From Lytechinus pictus (taxonomy: Eukaryota), in NCBI RefSeq assembly GCF_037042905.1, contig NC_087247.1, forward strand, positions 53,506,001 to 53,570,000: a stretch of DNA of 64,000 nt, written 5' to 3'. Positions within the stretch are counted from its first letter, which is position 1. The number at the start of each line of letters is the position of its first letter. Below, in pieces: positions 7,001 to 33,612 of the stretch. A program made the position numbers and the translations under genes. The notes under the pieces are model-generated. The model had not been told where the DNA came from. It ran no database searches and saw nothing but the letters and a program-made list of their open reading frames with translations.

Positions 7001-10000
7001 TACTAGTATTACTCTTCCAATTTGTCATCACGATGAACGTTGAGGGATTTACACACAAAAAAACCCAGAACATGAGTTATAATGAGGAGACATTGCCAGA
7101 TGCCCCAGTAGCATAAACAAATTGATATTTTATTATTTTGTATACTTAATATTCTTTATTTTTTCTTACTATTATCACCAGAAATGCTTATTGATGATGT
7201 TCTTTTTTTGTTGATAGTTATCGATATTGGTTAGATATTTTTAGCGAGATATCAACAGAGAATTTTCTTACCGATAATACCACTAGTTTTATGTAGATGA
7301 TTGCAATGCACAAAAAGGGAAAAAAAACTTGGGGCATCCAGAGCTGCCAACCATTACGTTTTTGCCGTAATCATTACGTTTTTTCATTAAAATTACGGCA
7401 TTACGGTTTTTCTTTTCAAATTACGTTTTTTGATAATTTTGATAACGTGTGTACATAATTGTATCTATCGTAGTGCGTGTTGAGCCCATTTGAGCCCGAG
7501 ATGAGCCTGGTACTTTCGTGTGCGTAGTCGCCCGCGCCGGCCGGTTTTCCAACGCACTTTAATAATTTAATAGCGCGCGCGTTCATATACGTTAGTTGAA
7601 TATGCGGGCGGCATGCATGGCACGAATCGTGGTATATAGCGACTGGTAAATACGTCTGTAAGGATGATGACGTCATCCAAGACGGCAACTTACGATGACC
7701 CACGAAAGGATTGAGGATGATTATGTTTTGATCATCATTTGAAAGGAAATAGCAGTAACTGCGGTCTAAGGTACGATATTTCTGAATTTCATATATTTTA
7801 TCTTAAATTTGCATGTGATTTCTTTCCCATAAAGTGATGTTTTATGTACAAAAAACGATCTGAAAATCGGATTTCCGCCGAATGTTAGATCTATCGTTAC
7901 TGCTAATACGTAGTCTTTACGCTAGGGCCAACGCTCTTCAGGTGAGTGGAGCCAACGTTCGTTCTGCAGCGCAGAGCGAGGAGTACGATGAATTGGGTAG
8001 GGTAATTCCCCAAATGTAGTAAGAGAAGAGTCCATTTATAATGGAGGGGGATTTGGAGGTTTGAGGGAAATTATTATTCTATTTGCAAAATTTTACAAAA
8101 ATACTCATCATATATTATTAAAGATGGAATCTTCAAAAGATATTTTCATATACTTTAAAATTAATTGTGGTGATAAAGAAATAAAATTTGGAGGCTATTT
8201 TCTTGAATTTATATATATGAATTCCCTTCGGATAATGGTACTGTCTGGTTAATTTTCATCAACTCGTATCAAACAAATACGATGAATTCGGCTTTGAAAA
8301 GACAGGGAAAGCTCTTCCTTGTCCCCTGAAGTAATAATTCTGGGTGATATTTAACATTTATTGATAGTTTCACATGATTTATACTAGAGAGATGTCCTAC
8401 TGCTTTTGGAATTCATTAAAAAAGTTGGCACTGTAGCATTCAGTTTAGCAGGAATGGGAAGATTTGTTCCCCGGTTCTGGCGGCCTAGATGTCTGCTCTA
8501 TAGTGCTGTCACTGCTGGTGATGATTGAGTGTGCGTGCAGTGTGATTGAAGCTGAGCTGTGCACATCGTGAAGTGATCTACGATGGGACTTTTGTGGAAT
8601 GATTTCAACTTCTTATCTATAGATCTATTTGAATTTTAGATTTTATTGATTTATGAATCATTTTTTGTATATTTTTGGAATGTTACATGTACTTCCATTT
8701 TATGACACTTTAATTTTAAAGCGTACTGTTTGGCAAAAACAATGTTACTTGGGAAGAGAAGTCTGAATTGATGTGAACTTTTTTTTATTTCTCTAGTCTA
8801 CAATTTGGTAGTTTTGTCAGGAAACTCAACATAATTAAATGAATTATTTTAGAAGTGGAAAGGAAGCCCCAGAAAAATTGAGCCCTAAAAATGTTCACCA
8901 GAACTGATTTTGGTGCCTCTGAAAGAATTTTTCTCGACAGATCTTCTTTCTGATAAGGAAGTGCCGAAGTAGGTTGCACTACAAAATTAAAGGCCTACTT
9001 GTCATTTTTAGAAAAATTTGCCTTGGTGCCCTTTTGACTAGAATAAAAGTGGCCTTCATGCCCTTTAGAATGGCCTTGATACCCCTTGAAATATTTGGGC
9101 ATCCAAGGCCACTTTGCCGGTTGCCCCAAGCTGAAAGTGCCCTTTTAAAAATGGCCTTGCCCCTCTCAATTCATAATTCAAGCCCTGCTACTGACTGAAT
9201 TAAAGTTGGTAGATTAAATCAAATAGGCCCAAGACTAAGGGTCCAATTTGTAACACTCAGTTATTTAGCCCAGACTAGGCCTAGAGATTATTTTTTTTAG
9301 TTCACTGCATACATACTTTTTGCATTGGATGTTTGTCGCATGTGGTTTTAAGGTTCGTTTTAACACATTCGTTTTTTTTTGTTGGAAATTCCTTTTTTTT
9401 GCCATAATGATTCCTTTTTTTGCTTGCACAAGGTTGGCAGCTCTGGGCATCAAGTACAAGTAATATAGAGAGAGTGCTTCCAATAAATGATAGCATTAAT
9501 TGTTTTATTTTTCCTATTTCAAATGAGTGGAGAAGAGCAAAATCTTCTTTGTCTGAGGTATCCATTTTGATGGTGCCAAAAGTACCGGTATATGAAGGTA
9601 TAGAACACGTGTGCTACCTCATGTGACCCGCCATGCCCGTATAGTGAATAGCGAATACTGTATACTCCTTTGTGAACTCGGCCTTAGCCGTGTAAAATGG
9701 TGTTAGTATACAGTTTACTGTGCTTCCTGCTCAAAGCATCTCATGAAACTTCAGATATTTCTATTTGAATATGCAGCTTAAAATCAAGAAGCAAAAACTG
9801 AATTTGAAAAAAAAGGGTTAACTTTTCGAAGAATGGCCCTTTACCATCATATCTATGAAAAAGATCTGAGACATAGAGAGGTGCCTCTAAGCAACTAAGA
9901 TAGAAGAAATTGATGAGAATAAGCTACTAGTATCAATTAATTCTGTATTTTTTGTCTTCCATCAGGCAGTAGATGAATTCTTCAGCGGTCGTTTCAGCCA

Positions 10001-13000
10001 CCCTCCACATGAAGTACTAACAGGTTTGCACAGTGCCCTGAGGATTATTGCTACTTCTTCTCACAGCTTCTATGAGGAAGATGAGCAACTCACTAGTGTC
10101 TGTAAGAAGATATATATGTAAGTACTGTATGTAGGGTCAAAGCACTGAGCCACCTTGAATTTCTTTCCTTTTAACACATTGGTTTATTTTCAATTGCTCT
10201 AATGCCAGTTCGTCCAAACACCAACTCATCTACTATCAATTGCTCTCCCATCAGTTAATCCACTATCCACATGGTCTAATTGCCATTTCGTCCACTCACC
10301 ATTTCATCTAATAACCAGTTCCAATAGCCATTTAGTCCATATACCATTTGGTTTAATTGGACTAAGTGTTAATTGTGCCGAAAATGAAATGGATATTAGA
10401 CCAACTTGTTATGAGACGAAATGGTCAGCGATGAACTGGTGATTAGACAAAGTGATGATTGGACCAAATGGTTGTTAGACGAAATGTTGATGGACAGAAT
10501 GGCATTAGACTAAATGAAGGTAGACCGTGTGATGAGTGGATGAGTTGGCAGTAGATGAATTGGCATTTTACCAACACATTGAGCTCTATGCCTGAAAAAC
10601 TTTGGGACAAGGGTGTATAGAAATATTTGCATAATTCAAAGTTTATTTGATGTCAACAAATTTTGTATTTTTTTAAATTGTCATTTTAATGTTTTTTCCT
10701 CTCATTTTATTAAGAAATTGTTCATCTTACATTTAGTTTCTCTAAGTCAGCAATGCTGTATTGTATTCCGTAATATATATGCAAGACTGTAGAGGTGTTC
10801 CACTTGTCAGAGAATTTCAGTTGTAGTTTATAAACAGAGATTCATGTAAAATGTATCCATGGTTGATGGAATTTTGACTAATTAAATGTATTTTTATACA
10901 ATAATTTGAAGACACATTGTGGGAAAGTTAATGTACTTTCTTTGGAACCATTGATTTAACTGTATTCATTGTGTGATTACATTGAATATTTGCAGCTACT
11001 GTGTAGAGATACTTCTTGACAAATCTTGGATGAGTGTGCAAGATGAAAGCAGAGCATCAGCAACCAAAGACTTTTATAAATTCTTCTGCTGTCTTTGGAA
11101 CTGGTCTCAAGATCGATTCCTGGTTTTGGCCATTCTTAGCCAGAAGCCATGGGGCCATGAGATAATGAATCAGGTGCTTGCAGGAGAGGAAAATACAGAC
11201 AAGCCAGAAGGTATTTTTATTATTATTATTAAGTCCTGTTTTGAGATGATAAATACGAAAGCCAATATAGGTTTGCCTTTTTTTTAGGCAAAGCCGCAAA
11301 GGTTTTTTTTTCAGCTTTACACTTGATCAGGTACATTTATTCCCAGCTAAGAAATATTTTTGCAAATCACAGTTCCAGTTATTTTAGGTATGTCAATTTT
11401 TTTTTAAAGTTACCTTTATATTTCAAGTCAATCTACTCCCATTCATATCTTTATAGACTTGTCAAGGTAGGTTTAAATGTTGTCAAATGCATGAAACCAT
11501 TTCATGCATTATTATGCAGGGAATAATTTTCCTGGTATTGCATTGCAATTTTCTCTAGTTCACGAGAATTGGACATAAGAGTAATCAAGTATCACTAAAC
11601 ATCCTGTGCAAGTTTCAGGTCACATGACCAAGATCAAAGGTCACTTTTAGGGCCAATAAACTTTGGCTATGTTGGGGGTATTTGTTGAATTGCCATCATA
11701 ACTTTGAAAGTATAAGGATCCAGTTTATGAAACACGGACAAGGTAATCAAGTACATGTATCACTGATCATCTTGCACAAGTCTTACGCCACATGATCGAG
11801 ATCAAATGTCATTTATAGTCAATGAACATAGTATTTTATTATCATATGCATGGTGTTGATTGTGAATAATTATTCAATGATTTCAAAGTCAGCACTACTG
11901 CTGCTACATGTATATTGAATCGCGTAATGCAGGTGAGATTGCCAGAGGCGTTTCACTTGTTTATGTCCTTGCCCACTGTAGGTAGATTCCGGAGGTATAA
12001 TGATTTCACTCTTGCAACATCTAAAGAATTGCTTGACAGATTAATTTCAAACTTGGTCAAAGTATACATTTAGGAGTAACAGAGATCTGATTAAATTTGT
12101 GGTAAAAAAGACAGGGGTCAAATGCAGAGTTGCCAACCTTAAATAATATTAATGAGATGTATTCTGATGTAATTCAGTGTTTACTTCCCGATTGAATGAT
12201 TGAGTGAAAAACCATTGTTAACATATTTTTTCTCATAAGAAAAGATTTGGTTCAGCCGTTTGGTAATTCACATTGTAATTTCTCATCTGATAAATATTTA
12301 GTAAGTGTTGGCATCTCTGCAAATGTTGCAGAGGTCATCTTATTCTGACAATGATAATATAAATGTTTGAGGGATCATTTTCATTCTGTGTTCATGTATG
12401 CATATTAGAAGGATGATAATTTGATTAGATTTGGAGGTCATGAGATAAATGTGAAAAGGTCACAATCCTTGCATAGCTGAAAATGTATCTTTGAGGAGTC
12501 AAATTCAAACTTGGATCATGTATGCATATGTGAGATGAATTGATTAGATTTTGGGGTCAAAAGGTCAGAAGTCATTATTTGAAAATTTTAGAAGTTGGCT
12601 ATATACTGAATTTTTGATATGGCAATGACAGAGGCATGAATATGAACTATCTGCATTAGAGAATCTACATGTATCTAGTTTTGTTTTCATTCTACCTATT
12701 TATGGAAAAAAATGTATTGAATGTAATTATGAACCATTGTATATAAAAGTTGGTGATTGATTTGTATGGAATGTATCTGATTTAGTTGATAGATACCTGA
12801 CCTTAGAAGGAAAGTACCTCCTTGAACATCGTCTGCAAGTCTTGATCCAGGAAGGCAACCCCCTGCATGCCTTGAACTTAGCCAGAGCCTGCACTGATCA
12901 CCCTGTTCTCGGACAAGAACCTATCTTCCTAGAGACTCTCTTTCTACTCTACTTCAATCTTGGTCTGACCCAAGAACTTGAGTCACAGGTAGGGTCAATC

Positions 13001-27592: not shown

Positions 27593-28481
27593 AACCATTT
27601 TTGATTATTTTATTCCATAATGTAGAGCATGTCCAAGAGGGATTTTTTTAATGAGGAGTTTACAGATTTCTTAGATAATTGTACCTTTTTATATGCAAGT
27701 TGCTGTAAGGTACGCCTGTACTGAAATTTCCGTTCCTCTTCAATTTTCTTGTAAGATCTTAATTTCTTTGTCTGGTAATTTGATACTTAAAACAATGCCA
27801 AAGAAGTCAAAGCATTTGGAAGATAAATTCAAATTACAATTATATTACCTTGGTATGATGAATATTTATTTGACTGTTATTTTTCCATTATTTCTTTTCT
27901 TCAAATGTTCTACCAGTTCTACCAACTGAACTCTGAAACCTGTTAAGGTGTTCCTACCTTAAGTGATAAACATTGGTGATTGTATTCATGTGACTTGATT
28001 TTGTAATTTGTATAAACTTTGAAATGTAACGTACATATAGTTCCTTGCCAGTGCATTCCAGGTTTTTGGAAAAGATTTTCTTGCAATAAATTCATGTACA
28101 AAACGCACCGTAACTGTAAATGATACCTCTCATTCATGTCTCACCTGAACAAAGTTCAGTAGAGACCTAGTGATCACATTTCCTGTAACTGATCTGTTGG
28201 TTTCATGGGAGGGGTTACTTATATAAATGTATGATACATATGTGCCACGGTCGAGACCTCCCATTTTCAGCCTAAATTTCCCTTCCACAGCATATCCAAT
28301 TTAGAAAGCCACAGAAATTCCTATCTTTTCCCCGTTCCGGAGACCCACAAATTTGTGACTTCTCATTCCAGTGACCGCTCAGACTGGATGAAGTACAATG
28401 GCAAATTGCCATTGACTGCGTGACCTAGCTCAGCACAGCGATTTGAAGACCGCTGATTGGTTCATCGCGCAGAAACGTCAT

Positions 28482-31400
28482 TAGTCCGGGTTATAATTGA
28501 GCAAGGTGCCACAAGAAAAAGGAGAAATTTTCATATAGTGCTTCTAGACCAGTTTTTTACGCTGAATATGAATATATGAGGTAACCAGGCTGTATCCTGA
28601 AAATTAACCCGTGAGGGCGCTTTTTTCAAAATGGCCGCCAAATTTTCAGAACATTTGAATTTTCGTACATAGATTTTGACATAAATATTCCATTGCCACA
28701 AAATTAGTGTCATATGAAAGACAAATAAATTTTCTACAATTTGGTACTATTTATAGAGGATAAGTAGGTCATTTGGCTGAGATTTTAAGTAGAAAACTGC
28801 ATTTTTTGTCATTTTTTCCCAAAAATTGAAAATTTAGCAAATACATGATTTTACATAATTCTGAGAAAAATGAATGAATTACCTTGAAATGTTCCAGAAA
28901 ACTTTATTGACATACTATTATCATGTGGATGAAATTCCAACTCTGTATCATTCTTCTTAGCAAATTTATAAGGTATCAAACTTGAATACTTCAATTTCAG
29001 AAATGTCGCTTTTTGTATGCATTTCCATAGACTAATACGTATAACATGTACATGTATAATATGTATAATGTATAGTTTAATAAAATTTAAAGGCAATTAT
29101 CTCCGCTTTTTAACCACTTGGAGAGTTAAGAGTAGGCTTTTCTCTATCAGCTACATAAAACAAAATGTTGGCACATCGAGGCCTAACACTCTCGTGGGGT
29201 GGGGGTGTCGAAGCCCCCCCCCCCCCCCACCCCCTTTGGCTATATCATGTTGTTGTATATTGCCTATTGGAAAATCACTATTTTTTTAAGCACCCATTGA
29301 GGCAAAAGGCATTTCTGCTATACAGTACATGCAGCCACTTTAATTACTTTGAAACCACTTGGAGAGGAAAAGAGTAAGCTTTGTCATGTTTGTTCTACCA
29401 GCTATATCAAAAGAAGTGGCACGTACATCGAAGCCAACCCCTCTCGGGGGGGAGGGCGCTGGGGAAGTCACCCCTCCCCCTTTTGCTTATTGGCAATGTA
29501 TTTGGAAATTCACCATTTTGGACCCAACATTGAGGCAAAAAAGCGTTTGTGCTTTATAATATTTTATCAATTTGAGAGAGTAGAGTTTGTTCTACCAGCT
29601 ACATAAATAAGCGCTAGCACATCGAACCCTAGCCCTCTCAGGGGCTGTCTAAGTCACCCCCTCCTCTATATCATGTATGTTGCCTATTTATTGGAAATTT
29701 CACCATTTTGGATCACCCATTGAGGCATAAGGGCGTTTCTATATCATACAGCCAATTTTATTTTCTTGCAATTACTTTGAGAGAAAAGCGTAGGCTTTGC
29801 TCTATCAGCTACAAATTATTAAGAAGCGCTGGCACATCGAAAAATATCCCTCTCAGGCGCTGTCTAAGTCAACCCCTCCCCCTCTATATCATGTATATTG
29901 CCTATTTATTGGAAATTACACCATTTTGAATCACCCGTTGAGGCAAAAGTGCGTTTCTACTATATAGCCAATTTCATTTTCTTGCAATGACTTGTAGAGG
30001 AAAGAGTAGGCTTTGCTCTATCAGCTGCATATAAACAAGTGCTGGCAAAGAAAAGCCTACTCCTTCCGGGATGCTGTTGAAATCACCCCATCCCTTTTGC
30101 ATTATAGCATATTTATTGAAAAATTCACCATTTTGGAGCCCCCATTTAGGCAAAAAGGCGTTTCTGATATAGTTCTGCCACTTTTACTGCCTTGAAACCA
30201 CTTAGGGAGGAAAGAATAGGATTTGCTTTATCAGAGCCACATATAAAGAAGTGCTGGCAAATAAAAACCTACCCCCTCCGGGAGGCTGTTGAAATCACCC
30301 CACCCCTTTTGCATTATTGCCTATTTATTGGAAAATTCACCATTTTGGAGCCCCCATTTAGGCAAAAAGGCATTTCTGATATAGTTCTGCCACTATTACT
30401 GCCTTGAAACCACTTAGGGAGTAAAGAATAGGTTTTGCTTTATCAGCTACATAAAAAGATGTGCTGGCAAATAAAAGCCTACTCCCTTTAGGGGACTGTC
30501 GAAATTACCCCCCCCCCCCTTGAAATTCACCATTTTGGAGCCTCCATTGAGGAAAAAAGGCGTTTATGATATATAGTTCTGCCACTTTTAAATCCTTGAA
30601 ACCACTTAGGGAGGAAAGAATAAGTTTTGCTTTATCAGCCACATATAAAAAAAGTGCAGGCAAACAGCAGGAGGCTGTCGAAATCACCCATCCCTTTTGC
30701 ATTATTGCCTATTTATTGAAAAAATCACCACTTTGGAGCCCCCATTGGGGCAGAAAGTCATTTCTGATTATGTTTCTGCCTTGTTTCACCCTTGAAAACT
30801 CTTGGAGAGAAAAAATAGGCTTTGCTTTAACAGCTACATATAAAGACATGCTCGCAAATAAAAGCCTATCCCCATCAGAGGGCTGTTGAAATCACCCCAC
30901 CCTTTTTCATTATTGCTTATTTATTGGAAAATTCACCATTTTGGAGCCCCCATTGAGGCAAAAAGGCGGTTCTGATATATAGTTCTACCACTATTACCGC
31001 CTTGAAACTACTTGGAGAGGAAAGAGTAGGCTTTCCTCTAACAGCTACATATAAAGAATTGGCTCTACTATATACCAGAAACACTTTTTTGCCTCAATGG
31101 GGCTCCAAAATGGCGAGTTTTCCAATGAATTGGAAAAAATCGTAAAAAAGGTGGGGTAACATCTATATAGTCCCCTGAAGTGGGTCAGGCTTCGATATGG
31201 CAGCAATTCGTTATATATAGCTGAAAGATGGGAACCTACTCTTTCCTCTCCAAGTGGTTTCAAGAAAATGAAATTGGGTGTTTTATACAGCAGAAGTGCA
31301 TATCGCCTCAATGGGGGCTCAAAAATTGTGAATTTTCAAATAATTAGGCAATAATGCAAGAGGGGTGGGGTGATTTGACAGCCGCCAAGATAGGTAAGCT

Positions 31401-33182
31401 TCAATGTGCCAGCACTTCTTTGTAGAGCAAAGCATATTCTTTCCTCCTTAATTGGTTTCAAGGCAATAAAAGTGGCAGAACTTTATATCAGAGATGTCTT
31501 TTTACCTCAATGGGGGCTCCAAAATGGTGACTTTTCAACAAATAGCCCAAAACCGAAAATTAGTGGGGTAACTTCTACAGCCGCTTGAAGGAGATACGCT
31601 TTGATTTGCCAACACTTCTTTATATGTAGCTGATAGAGCAAAGCCTACTCTTTCCTCTCCAAGTCATTGCTAGAAAAGAAATTTGCTGTACTATATAGTA
31701 GAAACGCCCTTTGCCTCAATGGGTGATGCAAATTGTGACTGTCCAATAGATAGTCAATTACCGAAAATTGGTGGGGTAAATTCTACAGCCCCCTGAACAT
31801 TCTGAAGGGGATAGGCTTTGATTTGCCAACACTTCTTGATATGTAGCTGATAGAGCAAAGCCTAATCTTTCCTCTCCAAGTCATTGCAAGAAAATAAAAT
31901 TGGCTGTACTATATAGTAGGAACGCGCTTTTGCCTGAATGGGTGATCCAAAATGGTGAAATATCCAATAAATCGGCAATATACATGATATAGAGGGGGAG
32001 GGGGTGACTTAGACAGCCCATGAGAGGGCTAGGGTTCAATGTGCCAGTGCTTATTTATATGTAGCTGGTAGAACAAACTCTACTCTTTCCTCTCTAAGTG
32101 GTTTCAAATCAATAAAATGGGGTGTACAACAAAGCACAAACGATTTTTGGCCTCAATGTTGGGTCCAAAATTGTGAATTTTCAAATAAATTGGCAATATT
32201 AAGCAACCCCCCCCCCCCCGAGAGGGGTAGGCTTCGATGTGCCACTTTGTATGTAGCTGGTAGAACAAAGCCTATATACTCTTTCCTCTCCAAGTGGTTT
32301 CAAAGCAATCAAAGTGACTGTACTGTATAGCAGAAATGCCTGTTTTTGCTTCAATGGGTGCTCCAAAAAAACAGAGATTTTTCCAACAAATAGGCAATAT
32401 ACAACAACATGATATAGCCAAGGGCAAGGGGGGGGGGGGGGGTGACTTCGACACCCCCACCCCATGAGAGGGTCAGGCCTTGATGTGCCAACATTTTGTT
32501 TTATGTAGCTGATAGAGAAAAGCCTACTCTTAACTCTCCAAGTGGTTAAAAAGCGGAGATAATTGCATTTAAATTTTATTAAACTATACATTATACATAT
32601 TATACATGTACAGTACATGTTATACGTATTAGTCTATGGAAATGCATACAAAAAGCGACATTTCTGAAATTGAAGTATTCAAGTTTGATACCTTATAAAT
32701 TTGCTAAGAAGAATGATACAGAGTTGGAATTTCATCCACATGATAATAGTATGTCAATAAAGTTTTCTGGAACATTTCAAGGTAATTCATTCATTTTTCT
32801 CAGAATTATGTAAAATCATGTATTTGCTAAATTTTCAATTTTTGGGAAAAAATGACAAAAAATGCAGTTTTCTACTTAAAATCTCAGCCAAATGACCTAC
32901 TTATCCTCTATAAATAGTACCAAATTGTAGAAAATTTATTTGTCTTTCATATGACACTAATTTTGTGGCAATGGAATATTTATGTCAAAATCTATGTACG
33001 AAAATTCAAATGTTCTGAAAATTTGGCGGCCATTTTGAAAAAAGCGCCCTCACGGGTTAATTTTCAGGATACAGCCTGGTTACCTCATATATTCATATTC
33101 AGCGTAAAAAACTGGTCTAGAAGCACTATATGAAAATTTCTCCTTTTTCTTGTGGCACCTTGCTCAATTATAACCCGGACTA
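28482..33182. mobile_element. 4.7-kb foldback non-autonomous DNA transposon with Academ-type ends
   Basis: TAGTCCGGGTTATAATTGAGC... / ...GCTCAATTATAACCCGGACTA; 3-bp TSD CAT (28479-28481, 33183-33185); about 0.6 kb near-identical outer TIR, then 200-240-bp tandem units in opposite orientation. Confidence 0.88.
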
Positions 33183-33363
33183 CATGACAAATTTCATGCA
33201 ACGCTCCGAAACATATAACTTATCCCGATGCAGCACATAGGTATCATTTTATAATTCGAGTACCCCCCCACATGCGTGTAGATGAGGATGATGTTGTTGA
33301 TCTAGGGGTCAAAAGGTCGAATGATATGAGGTCATCATAAGATGCAGCTTTGAATTTTATTGA

Positions 33364-33612
33364 AGGCTTGGTCCCACTGCACCTACTGATGCAGAGAGGA
33401 TGTTAAACGAAAAAAATCTTGCCATCCGTCGTGTACTCGTTGCATACATGTTTCATACGCTTTATATCCATCGAGCATCCGTCCACTGTGATTTCATTGT
33501 TCGTCCACTTTGTCCATTGTCTGGAGTAAATGGAGCCATCCCCAAAATTTTGCTTGTCTGCTGTATCCGTTATGAATACGCTTTGTGGCTGTTGGCCAGT
33601 GGGACCAGGCCT
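33364..33612. mobile_element. Harbinger-type MITE
   Basis: AGGCTTGGTCCCACTG / CAGTGGGACCAGGCCT ends, TGA/TAA flanks. Confidence 0.65.

What the first reader, a model, noticed from the sequence alone, without database searches (positions are those of the whole stretch)
28482..33182. 4.7-kb whole-element palindrome: foldback transposon with Academ-like ends and an internal satellite
Seen: TAG...CTA termini, 3-bp TSD CAT, and about 0.6 kb of near-identical outer arms (the same 60-aa spurious ORF appears on both strands). Inside are about 9-10 forward and about 7 reverse copies of a 200-240-bp unit that meet with no spacer near 31058. There is no coding capacity. From recall, TAG ends with a 3-bp TSD fit the Academ superfamily, whereas modular foldback arms are best known for FB/MuDR and Galileo. 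An Academ-type foldback would be unusual, and near-identical outer arms imply recent mobility or gene conversion.
Basis: partly seen in the sequence, partly recalled or inferred. Interest (0 to 1): 0.7.

Follow-up and report, generated by a model that had tools for sequence, protein, structure and literature searches.

The report
Foldback passenger of an Academ-type transposon
This 4.7-kb mirror-image stretch is one of about 200 young copies of a non-coding "jumping gene"; it most likely borrows its enzyme from a rare 8.7-kb relative in the same genome that encodes a transposase fused to an XPG/Exo1-type nuclease, so it is a real but fairly ordinary member of a little-studied transposon group.

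Summary
Window 28482-33182 has perfect 570-nt inverted outer arms, TAG...CTA ends and a CAT duplication. Inside are about 10 forward and 8 reverse ~212-bp units and no coding capacity.

It is not an assembly artefact. The terminal 25-mer occurs 424 times in the genome, which means about 200 elements. 22 of 25 foldback copies have 3-bp duplications. 30 uninterrupted paralogous target sites carry a single CAT.

I found a probable autonomous partner. It is 8.7 kb, with three intact copies at 99.7-100% identity and 3-bp duplications. Its first 32 nt are identical to the foldback's, and its outer 536 nt are 87% identical. Its single 1489-aa ORF folds as a DDE transposase (Z 10.3 to P-element transposase) joined to an XPG/FEN1/Exo1-type nuclease (Z 15.7 to Exo1). 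That architecture plus 3-bp duplications is what the literature gives for AcademX. Relatives at 30-46% identity in other assemblies keep TAGNCCRG ends and 3-bp duplications.

The two arms evolve in concert.

Earlier notes of this scan describe other Academ-like foldback families in this genome, but not this one. Verdict: a new member of known kinds, of moderate interest.

The parts
28479..28481 (.). Left copy of the 3-bp target-site duplication (CAT)
   Evidence: 30 uninterrupted paralogous sites in the genome carry a single CAT between the same flanks.
28482..29051 (+). Left outer arm (flanking domain), beginning TAGTCCGGG. It is the presumed transposase-binding end.
   Evidence: 100% complementary to 32613-33182. 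It is 87% identical over 536 nt to the terminal inverted repeat of the autonomous element L034, with the first 32 nt identical and the first 100 nt 96% identical.
29047..29231 (+). Left transition zone between the arm and the array, with the first degenerate unit and a poly-C tract
   Evidence: 96% complementary to 32428-32612.
29088..31058 (+). Forward array of about 10 units of 190-218 bp
   Evidence: Repeat families D1-D9. TRF periods 212 and 218. Unit map.
30984..31066 (.). Central turn. The tail of the last forward unit lies between the innermost inverted pair, with no foreign spacer.
31067..32575 (-). Reverse array of about 8 units, roughly 490 bp shorter than the forward array
   Evidence: Repeat families D4 and D10-D15. 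Unit map.
32428..32612 (-). Right transition zone, mirror of 29047-29231
32613..33182 (-). Right outer arm, ending CCCGGACTA
33183..33185 (.). Right copy of the 3-bp target-site duplication (CAT)
28207..28481 (.). Older dispersed repeat into which the element inserted. It continues at 33186-33213.
   Evidence: Paralogues L060-L063 align across the reconstructed junction at 73-81%. Contigs of public runs X1 and X7 join 28481 or 28474 to 33182 and beyond.

Best explanation
The stretch is a young, non-autonomous foldback DNA transposon that moves by cut-and-paste using an enzyme supplied in trans.

The most likely supplier is an 8.7-kb autonomous element of the same genome (L034 type, three intact copies). 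Its single 1489-aa protein has an N-terminal Cys/His-rich region, a DDE (RNase H-fold) transposase core and a C-terminal XPG/FEN1/Exo1-family nuclease. This is the architecture I recall for the AcademX lineage of the Academ superfamily; only the accessory nuclease and the 3-4-bp duplication come from a paper I could read.

Shown here:
- the element's boundaries and its 3-bp duplication;
- its copy number and its youth;
- the shared termini with the coding element;
- the two folds of the protein;
- conservation of TAGNCCRG ends plus 3-bp duplications among relatives in other assemblies.

Inferred:
- The transposase recognises the conserved outermost tens of bases and integrates with a 3-bp stagger.
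- The fused nuclease processes the other strand or a flap.
- The foldback arose from an ancestor of the coding element by loss of the gene and growth of inverted unit arrays.

The two outer arms are kept alike by exchange between them (concerted evolution). The unequal inner arrays are inherited as such by all copies.
For: Mobility:
- The terminal 25-mer has 424 matches (210 forward, 214 reverse; control 0). Arms of other copies are 99-100% identical.
- 3-bp duplications occur in 22 of 25 foldback copies and 2 of 2 autonomous copies, with varied sequences.
- 30 paralogous empty sites carry a single CAT and align across the junction.
- 20 full copies are 90-99.5% identical to the window copy over the whole length, each with one clearly better orientation. 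The asymmetric interior is therefore inherited.

Partner element:
- L034 and L033 are 99.7% alike and have different flanks and duplications (ATA, TTA).
- The genome holds three open copies at 100% protein identity and one broken copy at 98%. All other relatives are at 29% or less apart from broken fragments at C3:2.18 Mb (38-69% over short stretches, many stops).
- Termini are shared with the foldback.

Protein:
- The middle domain model has pLDDT 80.6. Its best matches are all DDE transposases: P element Z 10.3 (377 aligned), ISCth4 8.3, Hermes 6.9, RAG1 6.6.
- D443 and E856 (on beta-1 and the helix after the insertion domain) are nearly invariant and invariant respectively, and D613 (end of beta-4) is invariant.
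- The C-terminal model has pLDDT 86.8. It matches Exo1 at Z 15.7 (258 aligned, rmsd 3.5), FEN1 at 13.8, GEN1 at 12.3 and XPG at 12.2. The profile's best PDB sequence hit is Exo1, at the GxD(Y) motif.

Family signature: homologues at 46, 45 and 30% identity sit in elements with ends TAGACCAGG or TAGGCCGG and duplications TAT, TTG and TAG.

Literature: AcademX has a nuclease and 3-4-bp duplications (PMC10045372). Repbase files a non-autonomous element with an autonomous one when the duplication length matches and termini 1-11 align (PMC4455052).

Concerted arms: within-copy arm divergence has a median of 1.3%, against 3.5-3.7% between copies, with no side-specific signal. Among 96 shared variants there are 144 copy-cases in both arms and 125 in one arm, including variants seen only in one sampled copy but on both of its arms.
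Against: - Beyond the first 100 nt, the foldback arms are only 87% identical to the partner's ends. No coding copy with 99% matching arms was found, so cross-mobilisation is inferred, not shown.
- No Pfam family matches the protein itself. The link to DUF6589 is only through more distant homologues.
- No reference Academ sequence was available, and the papers defining the superfamily (Kapitonov & Jurka 2010, Yuan & Wessler 2011, Kojima 2020) are not held.
- Three of 25 foldback copies lack matching duplications.
- No allelic empty site was demonstrated. The joined contigs in runs X1 and X7 differ from the flanks and may be paralogues.
Confidence: 0.8

Rival explanations
1. The element is a foldback transposon but is mobilised by a different enzyme. 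That enzyme could be an extinct or unassembled closer master, or another superfamily that makes 3-bp duplications, such as PIF/Harbinger or CACTA. On this reading the similarity to L034 ends reflects only common descent.
For: The arms are only 87% identical to the L034 ends beyond the first 100 nt. There are about 200 foldback copies against only 3-4 coding copies.
Against: The first 32 nt are identical and the first 100 nt are 96% identical. Both families are young and both make 3-bp duplications. The only intact transposase above 29% identity in the genome is the L034 type; the other close matches are broken fragments. The ends are not CACTA. Only a minority of duplications are TAA or TTA. 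Relatives in other assemblies keep the same end motif.
Confidence: 0.12
2. The palindrome is an assembly artefact or a local inverted duplication of a satellite array, not a mobile element.
For: Long perfect inverted repeats can be produced by chimeric long reads. No read spans the whole stretch, because only contigs and short reads were available.
Against: The same structure, with the same asymmetric interior, occurs at about 200 loci on many contigs. Each copy has its own flanks and 3-bp duplication. Empty paralogous sites exist.
Confidence: 0.01
3. Besides being a passenger, the foldback acts on its own family. Read-through transcripts would fold into a long hairpin and feed small-RNA silencing of elements that share the 536-nt ends, which would keep the coding master at a few copies.
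For: There is hairpin potential of about 2.1 kb per side. Low RNA-seq coverage is seen on both strands across the element in run X23. Coding copies are few and foldback copies many.
Against: No small-RNA data were examined. Most RNA reads are only 90-95% alike and cannot be assigned to a copy. Coverage may be read-through or DNA carry-over. This reading is not exclusive of the best explanation.
Confidence: 0.1

Closest known systems
AcademX lineage of the Academ superfamily (Kapitonov & Jurka 2010; Kojima 2020, as summarised in PMC10045372)
   Same: The partner encodes a DDE transposase together with an XPG-family nuclease in one protein. It makes 3-bp target duplications and has terminal inverted repeats. 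The foldback shares its termini.
   Different: Homology to reference Academ proteins was not tested here. I did not find a satellite-armed foldback derivative described for this superfamily in the papers I could search.
Tetris foldback element of Drosophila virilis (PMC4079207)
   Same: The modular layout is nearly the same: a unique flanking domain of several hundred bp, then a variable number of ~220-bp tandem repeats inside each inverted arm. It has no ORF, and its copy structure varies by unit number.
   Different: Tetris makes 8-10-bp duplications and is assigned to Mutator, and no autonomous partner was found for it. Here the duplication is 3 bp and a coding partner exists. I found no stand-alone satellite arrays of the unit among the best genome matches.
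FB elements of Drosophila melanogaster and Galileo of the D. buzzatii group
   Same: Very long inverted arms with internal tandem repeats, and arms of one copy more alike than arms of different copies. This is from my knowledge of the Galileo literature and was not checked here.
   Different: FB belongs with MuDR and makes 9-bp duplications (from my own knowledge). Galileo belongs with P and makes 7-bp duplications. Both mismatch this element.
TU foldback elements of the sea urchin Strongylocentrotus purpuratus (Liebermann et al. 1983, cited in PMC4079207)
   Same: Foldback transposons of an echinoderm genome with a modular build. Earlier notes of this scan call this genome a sea urchin.
   Different: From memory only, TU arms have outer domains of 15-bp repeats and a longer duplication. 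The papers are not held and I did not test this.

Membership tests
Academ superfamily, AcademX lineage | DDE (RNase H-fold) transposase encoded by the autonomous element | tested here: met
   Model of residues 330-1060 has pLDDT 80.6. All 35 best structural matches are DDE transposases or recombinases: P element Z 10.3, ISCth4 8.3, Hermes 6.9, RAG1 6.6. Conserved D443, D613 and E856 lie at the canonical positions.
Academ superfamily, AcademX lineage | XPG-family nuclease encoded with the transposase in a single protein | tested here: met
   Model of residues 1050-1489 has pLDDT 86.8. Matches: Exo1 Z 15.7 (258 aligned, rmsd 3.5), FEN1 13.8, GEN1 12.3, XPG 12.2. Foldseek probability is about 1. 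The acidic motifs EADT, DTD and TGxD are conserved.
Academ superfamily, AcademX lineage | Target-site duplication of 3 or 4 bp (PMC10045372) | tested here: met
   24 of 27 insertions have 3-bp duplications. A single CAT is present at 30 empty paralogous sites. Three relatives in other assemblies also make 3-bp duplications.
Academ superfamily, AcademX lineage | Significant sequence similarity of the transposase to reference Academ transposases (Repbase; Yuan & Wessler profile) | not testable with these tools
   No Repbase or Dfam library was available, and the defining papers are not held. The only link is indirect: distant homologues carry Pfam DUF6589. DUF6589 is reported as enriched in rust fungi, where Academ is most abundant (PMC5751038).
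Academ superfamily (filing of the non-autonomous element, Repbase rule in PMC4455052) | Same duplication length as an autonomous member, and termini that align from position 1 to 11 with at most one mismatch | tested here: met
   Both make 3-bp duplications, and the first 32 nt are identical to L034 and L033.
Foldback elements (structural class) | Inverted arms that make up most of the element, contain tandem sub-repeats, leave little or no middle domain and carry no ORF | tested here: met
FB / Mutator-type foldback | Duplication of 8-10 bp | tested here: not met
   The duplication is 3 bp.
PIF/Harbinger | 3-bp duplication of TWA and a DDE_Tnp_4-type transposase | tested here: not met
   Duplications are varied (CAT, CTT, ACG, CCA, GAG, AAA and others); only a minority are TAA or TTA. 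The partner protein has no such Pfam match.
CACTA/EnSpm | CACTA termini with a 3-bp duplication | tested here: not met
   The termini are TAGTCCGGG.

The most novel reading that the evidence does not exclude
This would be the first described satellite-armed foldback lineage in the Academ superfamily. It has arms kept identical by ongoing exchange, and it coexists with intact, apparently still active AcademX master copies. Together they would form a natural donor and helper pair in which the role of the fused XPG-type nuclease in cut-and-paste transposition, and in setting the 3-bp stagger, could be tested directly.
Probability: 0.35. Interest if true: 0.5.

Novelty: new member of a known kind. 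Interest (0 to 1): 0.4.

Why it matters
Academ is one of the least studied cut-and-paste superfamilies. To my knowledge, no member has been shown to move experimentally, and the job of its fused XPG-type nuclease is unknown.

This genome offers three intact, near-identical coding copies and about 200 young non-coding passengers with defined ends and a 3-bp duplication. That is a ready-made pair for a transposition assay.

The finding also shows that the foldback build (a unique outer domain plus ~200-bp repeats) can arise outside the Mutator and P superfamilies. This supports the view that it is a convergent architecture.

For annotation, the 4.7-kb palindrome is not a misassembly. With copies this alike, it is a likely hot spot for ectopic recombination and for hairpin formation.

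Tried and rejected
- Rfam scan of 20000-42000: no match.
- Pfam on the 1489-aa protein, whole and in three pieces: nothing significant.
- Foldseek on the middle domain gave no hit at E 0.001 or better. Only the VIA re-alignment gave clear Z-scores.
- Papers defining Academ (Kojima 2020; Yuan & Wessler 2011) are not held. Searching 'Academ' with 'XPG' as whole words found nothing.
- The protein Atlas was busy on four tries.
The third intact master copy (C10) and the broken one (C2) were therefore not read.
- I tested the lead that Academ target sites have dyad symmetry. In 24 sites there is no general symmetry. There is only an A/T middle base in 22 of 24 and a weak C...G bias at positions -3/-2 and +2/+3.
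- I looked for stand-alone arrays of the 212-bp unit. The best 40 scored loci all lie inside copies of the element. This is not proof of absence.
- Longer copies are not closer masters. L035-L039 carry nested insertions, and L031+L032 carries a 7-kb insert with no long ORF in the 5.4 kb of it that I scanned (L031; the last 1.7 kb, in L032, was not scanned).
- The large profile search of 1.84 billion proteins was not run.
Full report
**1. The observation**

Window 28482-33182 contains two outer arms of 570 nt that are 100% complementary (28482-29051 and 32613-33182). They are followed inward by 185 nt at 96%.

The ends read TAGTCCGGG...CCCGGACTA. CAT stands on both sides, at 28479-28481 and 33183-33185.

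Between the arms lie about 10 forward units (29112-31044) and about 8 reverse units (31071-32547), with a period of 190-218 bp. The arrays meet without foreign DNA. The last forward unit ends near 31058 and the reverse array starts at 31067. This leaves an 83-nt turn between the innermost inverted pair.

The palindrome is imperfect. The in-register mirror alignment covers about 2.1 kb per side at 83%, and the left array is about 490 bp longer.

There is no coding capacity. The longest ORF is 139 aa, and the three longest ORFs have no Pfam match. Rfam finds nothing.

**2. It is a mobile family, not an artefact**

- The 570-nt arm finds 915 candidate places in the window's own 811-Mb assembly. 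The 40 that were scored are 99-100% identical.
- The terminal 25-mer, with up to 2 mismatches, occurs 210 times forward and 214 times reverse, against 0 for the control. That is about 200 elements.
- Among the pairs listed, most lie 4.2-5.5 kb apart.
- 18 of 21 full copies have identical 3-bp flanks. So do four further pairs and both coding copies, which makes 24 of 27 in all. The duplicated triplets vary (CAT, CTT, TTA, ACG, TAT, AAA, CCA, GAG and others).
- A 28-nt pattern made of the left flank, one CAT and the right flank finds 30 places in the genome with 1-3 mismatches, against 0 for the control.
- Four of those places align across the reconstructed junction. The window copy therefore landed in an older dispersed repeat, and its boundaries and 3-bp duplication are exact.
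- Contigs of public runs X1 and X7 also join 28481 or 28474 to 33182 and beyond. They may be paralogues, so I do not claim an allelic empty site.
- Twenty full copies are 90-99.5% identical to the window copy over the whole length, and one orientation always scores far better than the other. The unequal interior is therefore inherited from a master and not formed anew at each locus.
- A 424-bp unit dimer is 97-99% conserved at the corresponding position of other copies.

**3. The coding partner**

A few pairs of termini are much further apart. L034 (C3:12092102-12101037) and L033 (C3:81966872-81976411) are 99.7% identical over 8 kb. They have about 1.06-kb inverted ends (89% between the two ends over the full length, 99.4% over the outer 536 nt). 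They lie in different flanks, with duplications ATA and TTA.

Each holds one long ORF of 1489-1540 aa. The genome has three open copies at 100% protein identity and one broken copy at 98%. Every other intact relative is at 29% identity or less; the only closer matches are broken fragments at C3:2.18 Mb (38-69% over short stretches, many stops).

The foldback shares its outer 536 nt with these elements at 87%, the first 100 nt at 96%, and the first 32 nt exactly.

**4. What the protein is**

Pfam gives nothing for the protein. A word-based search found 14 homologues at 22-48% identity. Three of the distant ones carry DUF6589. DUF6589 also hits loci of this genome that are 26% homologues of the protein.

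*Middle domain.* With these homologues as the alignment, residues 330-1060 fold with pLDDT 80.6. After re-alignment, the best matches are all DDE enzymes with an inserted helical domain:
- P-element transposase, Z 10.3 (377 aligned)
- ISCth4, Z 8.3
- Hermes, Z 6.9
- RAG1, Z 6.6
- Transib, Z 5.0

The conserved D443, D613 and E856 sit on strand 1, at the end of strand 4, and on the helix after the insertion. These are the canonical places.

*C-terminal domain.* Residues 1050-1489 fold with pLDDT 86.8. They match the whole catalytic domain of human Exo1 (Z 15.7, 258 aligned, rmsd 3.5), FEN1 (13.8), GEN1 (12.3), XPG (12.2) and Rad2 (11.9). The family profile's best PDB sequence hit is Exo1, at the H3TH-side GxD motif. 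The acidic motifs EADT, DTD and TGxD are conserved.

The protein is thus a DDE transposase fused to an XPG-family nuclease.

**5. Family signature in other genomes**

Three homologues could be read in their contigs.
- The 46% relative (L064) lies in a 6.2-kb element with 336-nt inverted ends, termini TAGACCAGG and duplication TAT.
- The 45% relative (L067) has termini TAGACCAGG and duplication TTG.
- The 30% relative (L066) has termini TAGGCCGG and duplication TAG.

TAGNCCRG ends and a 3-bp duplication therefore go with this transposase across deep divergence.

**6. Comparison with what is known**

- Kojima 2023 (PMC10045372) states that in Academ, AcademX makes 3-4-bp duplications and AcademH 9-10-bp ones, and links this to the accessory nuclease or helicase.
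- My recollection of Kojima 2020 is that AcademX encodes the transposase and an XPG nuclease in one protein. That paper is not held.
- Repbase files non-autonomous elements with an autonomous one when the duplication length matches and termini 1-11 align (PMC4455052). Both conditions are met.
- The one feature I could not test is sequence similarity to reference Academ proteins.
- Structurally, the closest described thing is Tetris of Drosophila virilis: an outer unique domain plus ~220-bp repeats in each arm. Tetris makes 8-10-bp duplications, is assigned to Mutator and has no known master (PMC4079207). That paper also notes that most foldback elements are Mutator-like, with a few exceptions.

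**7. Concerted evolution of the arms**

In 21 copies, the two arms of a copy differ by a median of 1.3%. Arms of different copies differ by 3.5-3.7%, whether from the same or the opposite side.

Of 96 variants seen at least twice among the 42 arms, there are 144 copy-cases on both arms of a copy and 125 on one arm. Subfamily-defining changes (alignment columns 32, 34, 205, 252, 267, 355) are on both arms of every carrier. Several changes seen in a single sampled copy are on both of its arms.

A change must arise on one arm, so it has been copied to the other. The inner arrays do not share this homogeneity. Whether the mechanism is gene conversion, hairpin-templated repair or something else is not shown.

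**8. Mechanism, with status**

Shown:
- exact ends and the 3-bp duplication;
- dependence on an outside enzyme (no ORF);
- a co-resident young coding element with the same ends;
- the two folds of its protein.

Inferred:
- That protein binds the outermost conserved bases of the foldback, cuts it out and integrates it with a 3-bp stagger.
- The nuclease domain handles the second strand or a flap.
- The foldback descends from an ancestor of the coding element.

Weak target preference: the middle base of the duplication is A or T in 22 of 24 sites, with some C at positions -3/-2 and G at +2/+3, and there is no general dyad symmetry.

**9. Earlier notes of this scan**

Other agents described Academ-like foldback or non-autonomous families, and an AcademX-type element with a 'giant transposase-nuclease', elsewhere in this genome. 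They call the genome a sea urchin. I did not verify the species. Those notes concern other families. One foldback noted 5.8 Mb upstream does not carry this family's terminal 25-mer in the list.

**10. Verdict**

It is a young non-autonomous foldback member of an AcademX-type family, with a plausible active master. Interest is moderate, and novelty is that of a new member of known kinds.

Noticed in passing
L035:1354-4658, L037:1350-2579, L038:1323-2699, L039:3461-4834: Four genomic copies of the foldback family carry the same 1.2-1.4-kb nested element at the same site of a unit. Its ends read CAGTGCGTATAG..., it has a TA or TATA duplication, and the copies are 88-98% alike. The composite therefore went on transposing with its passenger. 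L035 has in addition a reverse-transcriptase-coding insert.
   Followed up: partly
L036:2244-4003: A 1.76-kb insert with ends CAGTGCGTCCC...GGGACGCACTG and a TATA flank, related in its termini to the nested element above but at a different site.
   Followed up: no
window 28207-28481 and 33186-33612: The flanks belong to older dispersed repeats. The run depth there is in the thousands, and RNA-seq run X23 covers 33219-33612 at 50-80 reads per bin with a strand bias.
   Followed up: partly
L034:77-100 and 8837-8859: The autonomous copy L034 lies in a target whose flanks are themselves inverted complements of each other for about 24 nt. Other sites show no such symmetry.
   Followed up: partly
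L034:108-272 and 697-860 (mirrored at 8083-8241 and 8665-8829): Each end of the coding element contains a second, 82% identical copy of its own terminal 165 nt about 590 bp further in. This may provide extra transposase-binding sites.
   Followed up: no
L031+L032 (G000:C5:15431524-15444516): A 12.8-kb pair of family termini encloses a 7-kb insert. No ORF of 120 aa was found in the L031 part (5.4 kb of it); the last 1.7 kb, in L032, was not scanned. A further 1-kb insert is also present. Their nature is unknown.
   Followed up: no
own genome, e.g. G000:C2:69719084-69721849, C5:35374493-35377600, C16:17763739-17766858: There are at least a dozen further families of the same transposase-nuclease type at 24-29% identity. 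Many have open frames of 1100-1700 aa, and some match Pfam DUF6589.
   Followed up: no
L067:3329-3763, 9866-12032: In another assembly, the 45% relative of the element is surrounded by PIF/Harbinger-type transposase genes (DDE_Tnp_4, Plant_tran).
   Followed up: no
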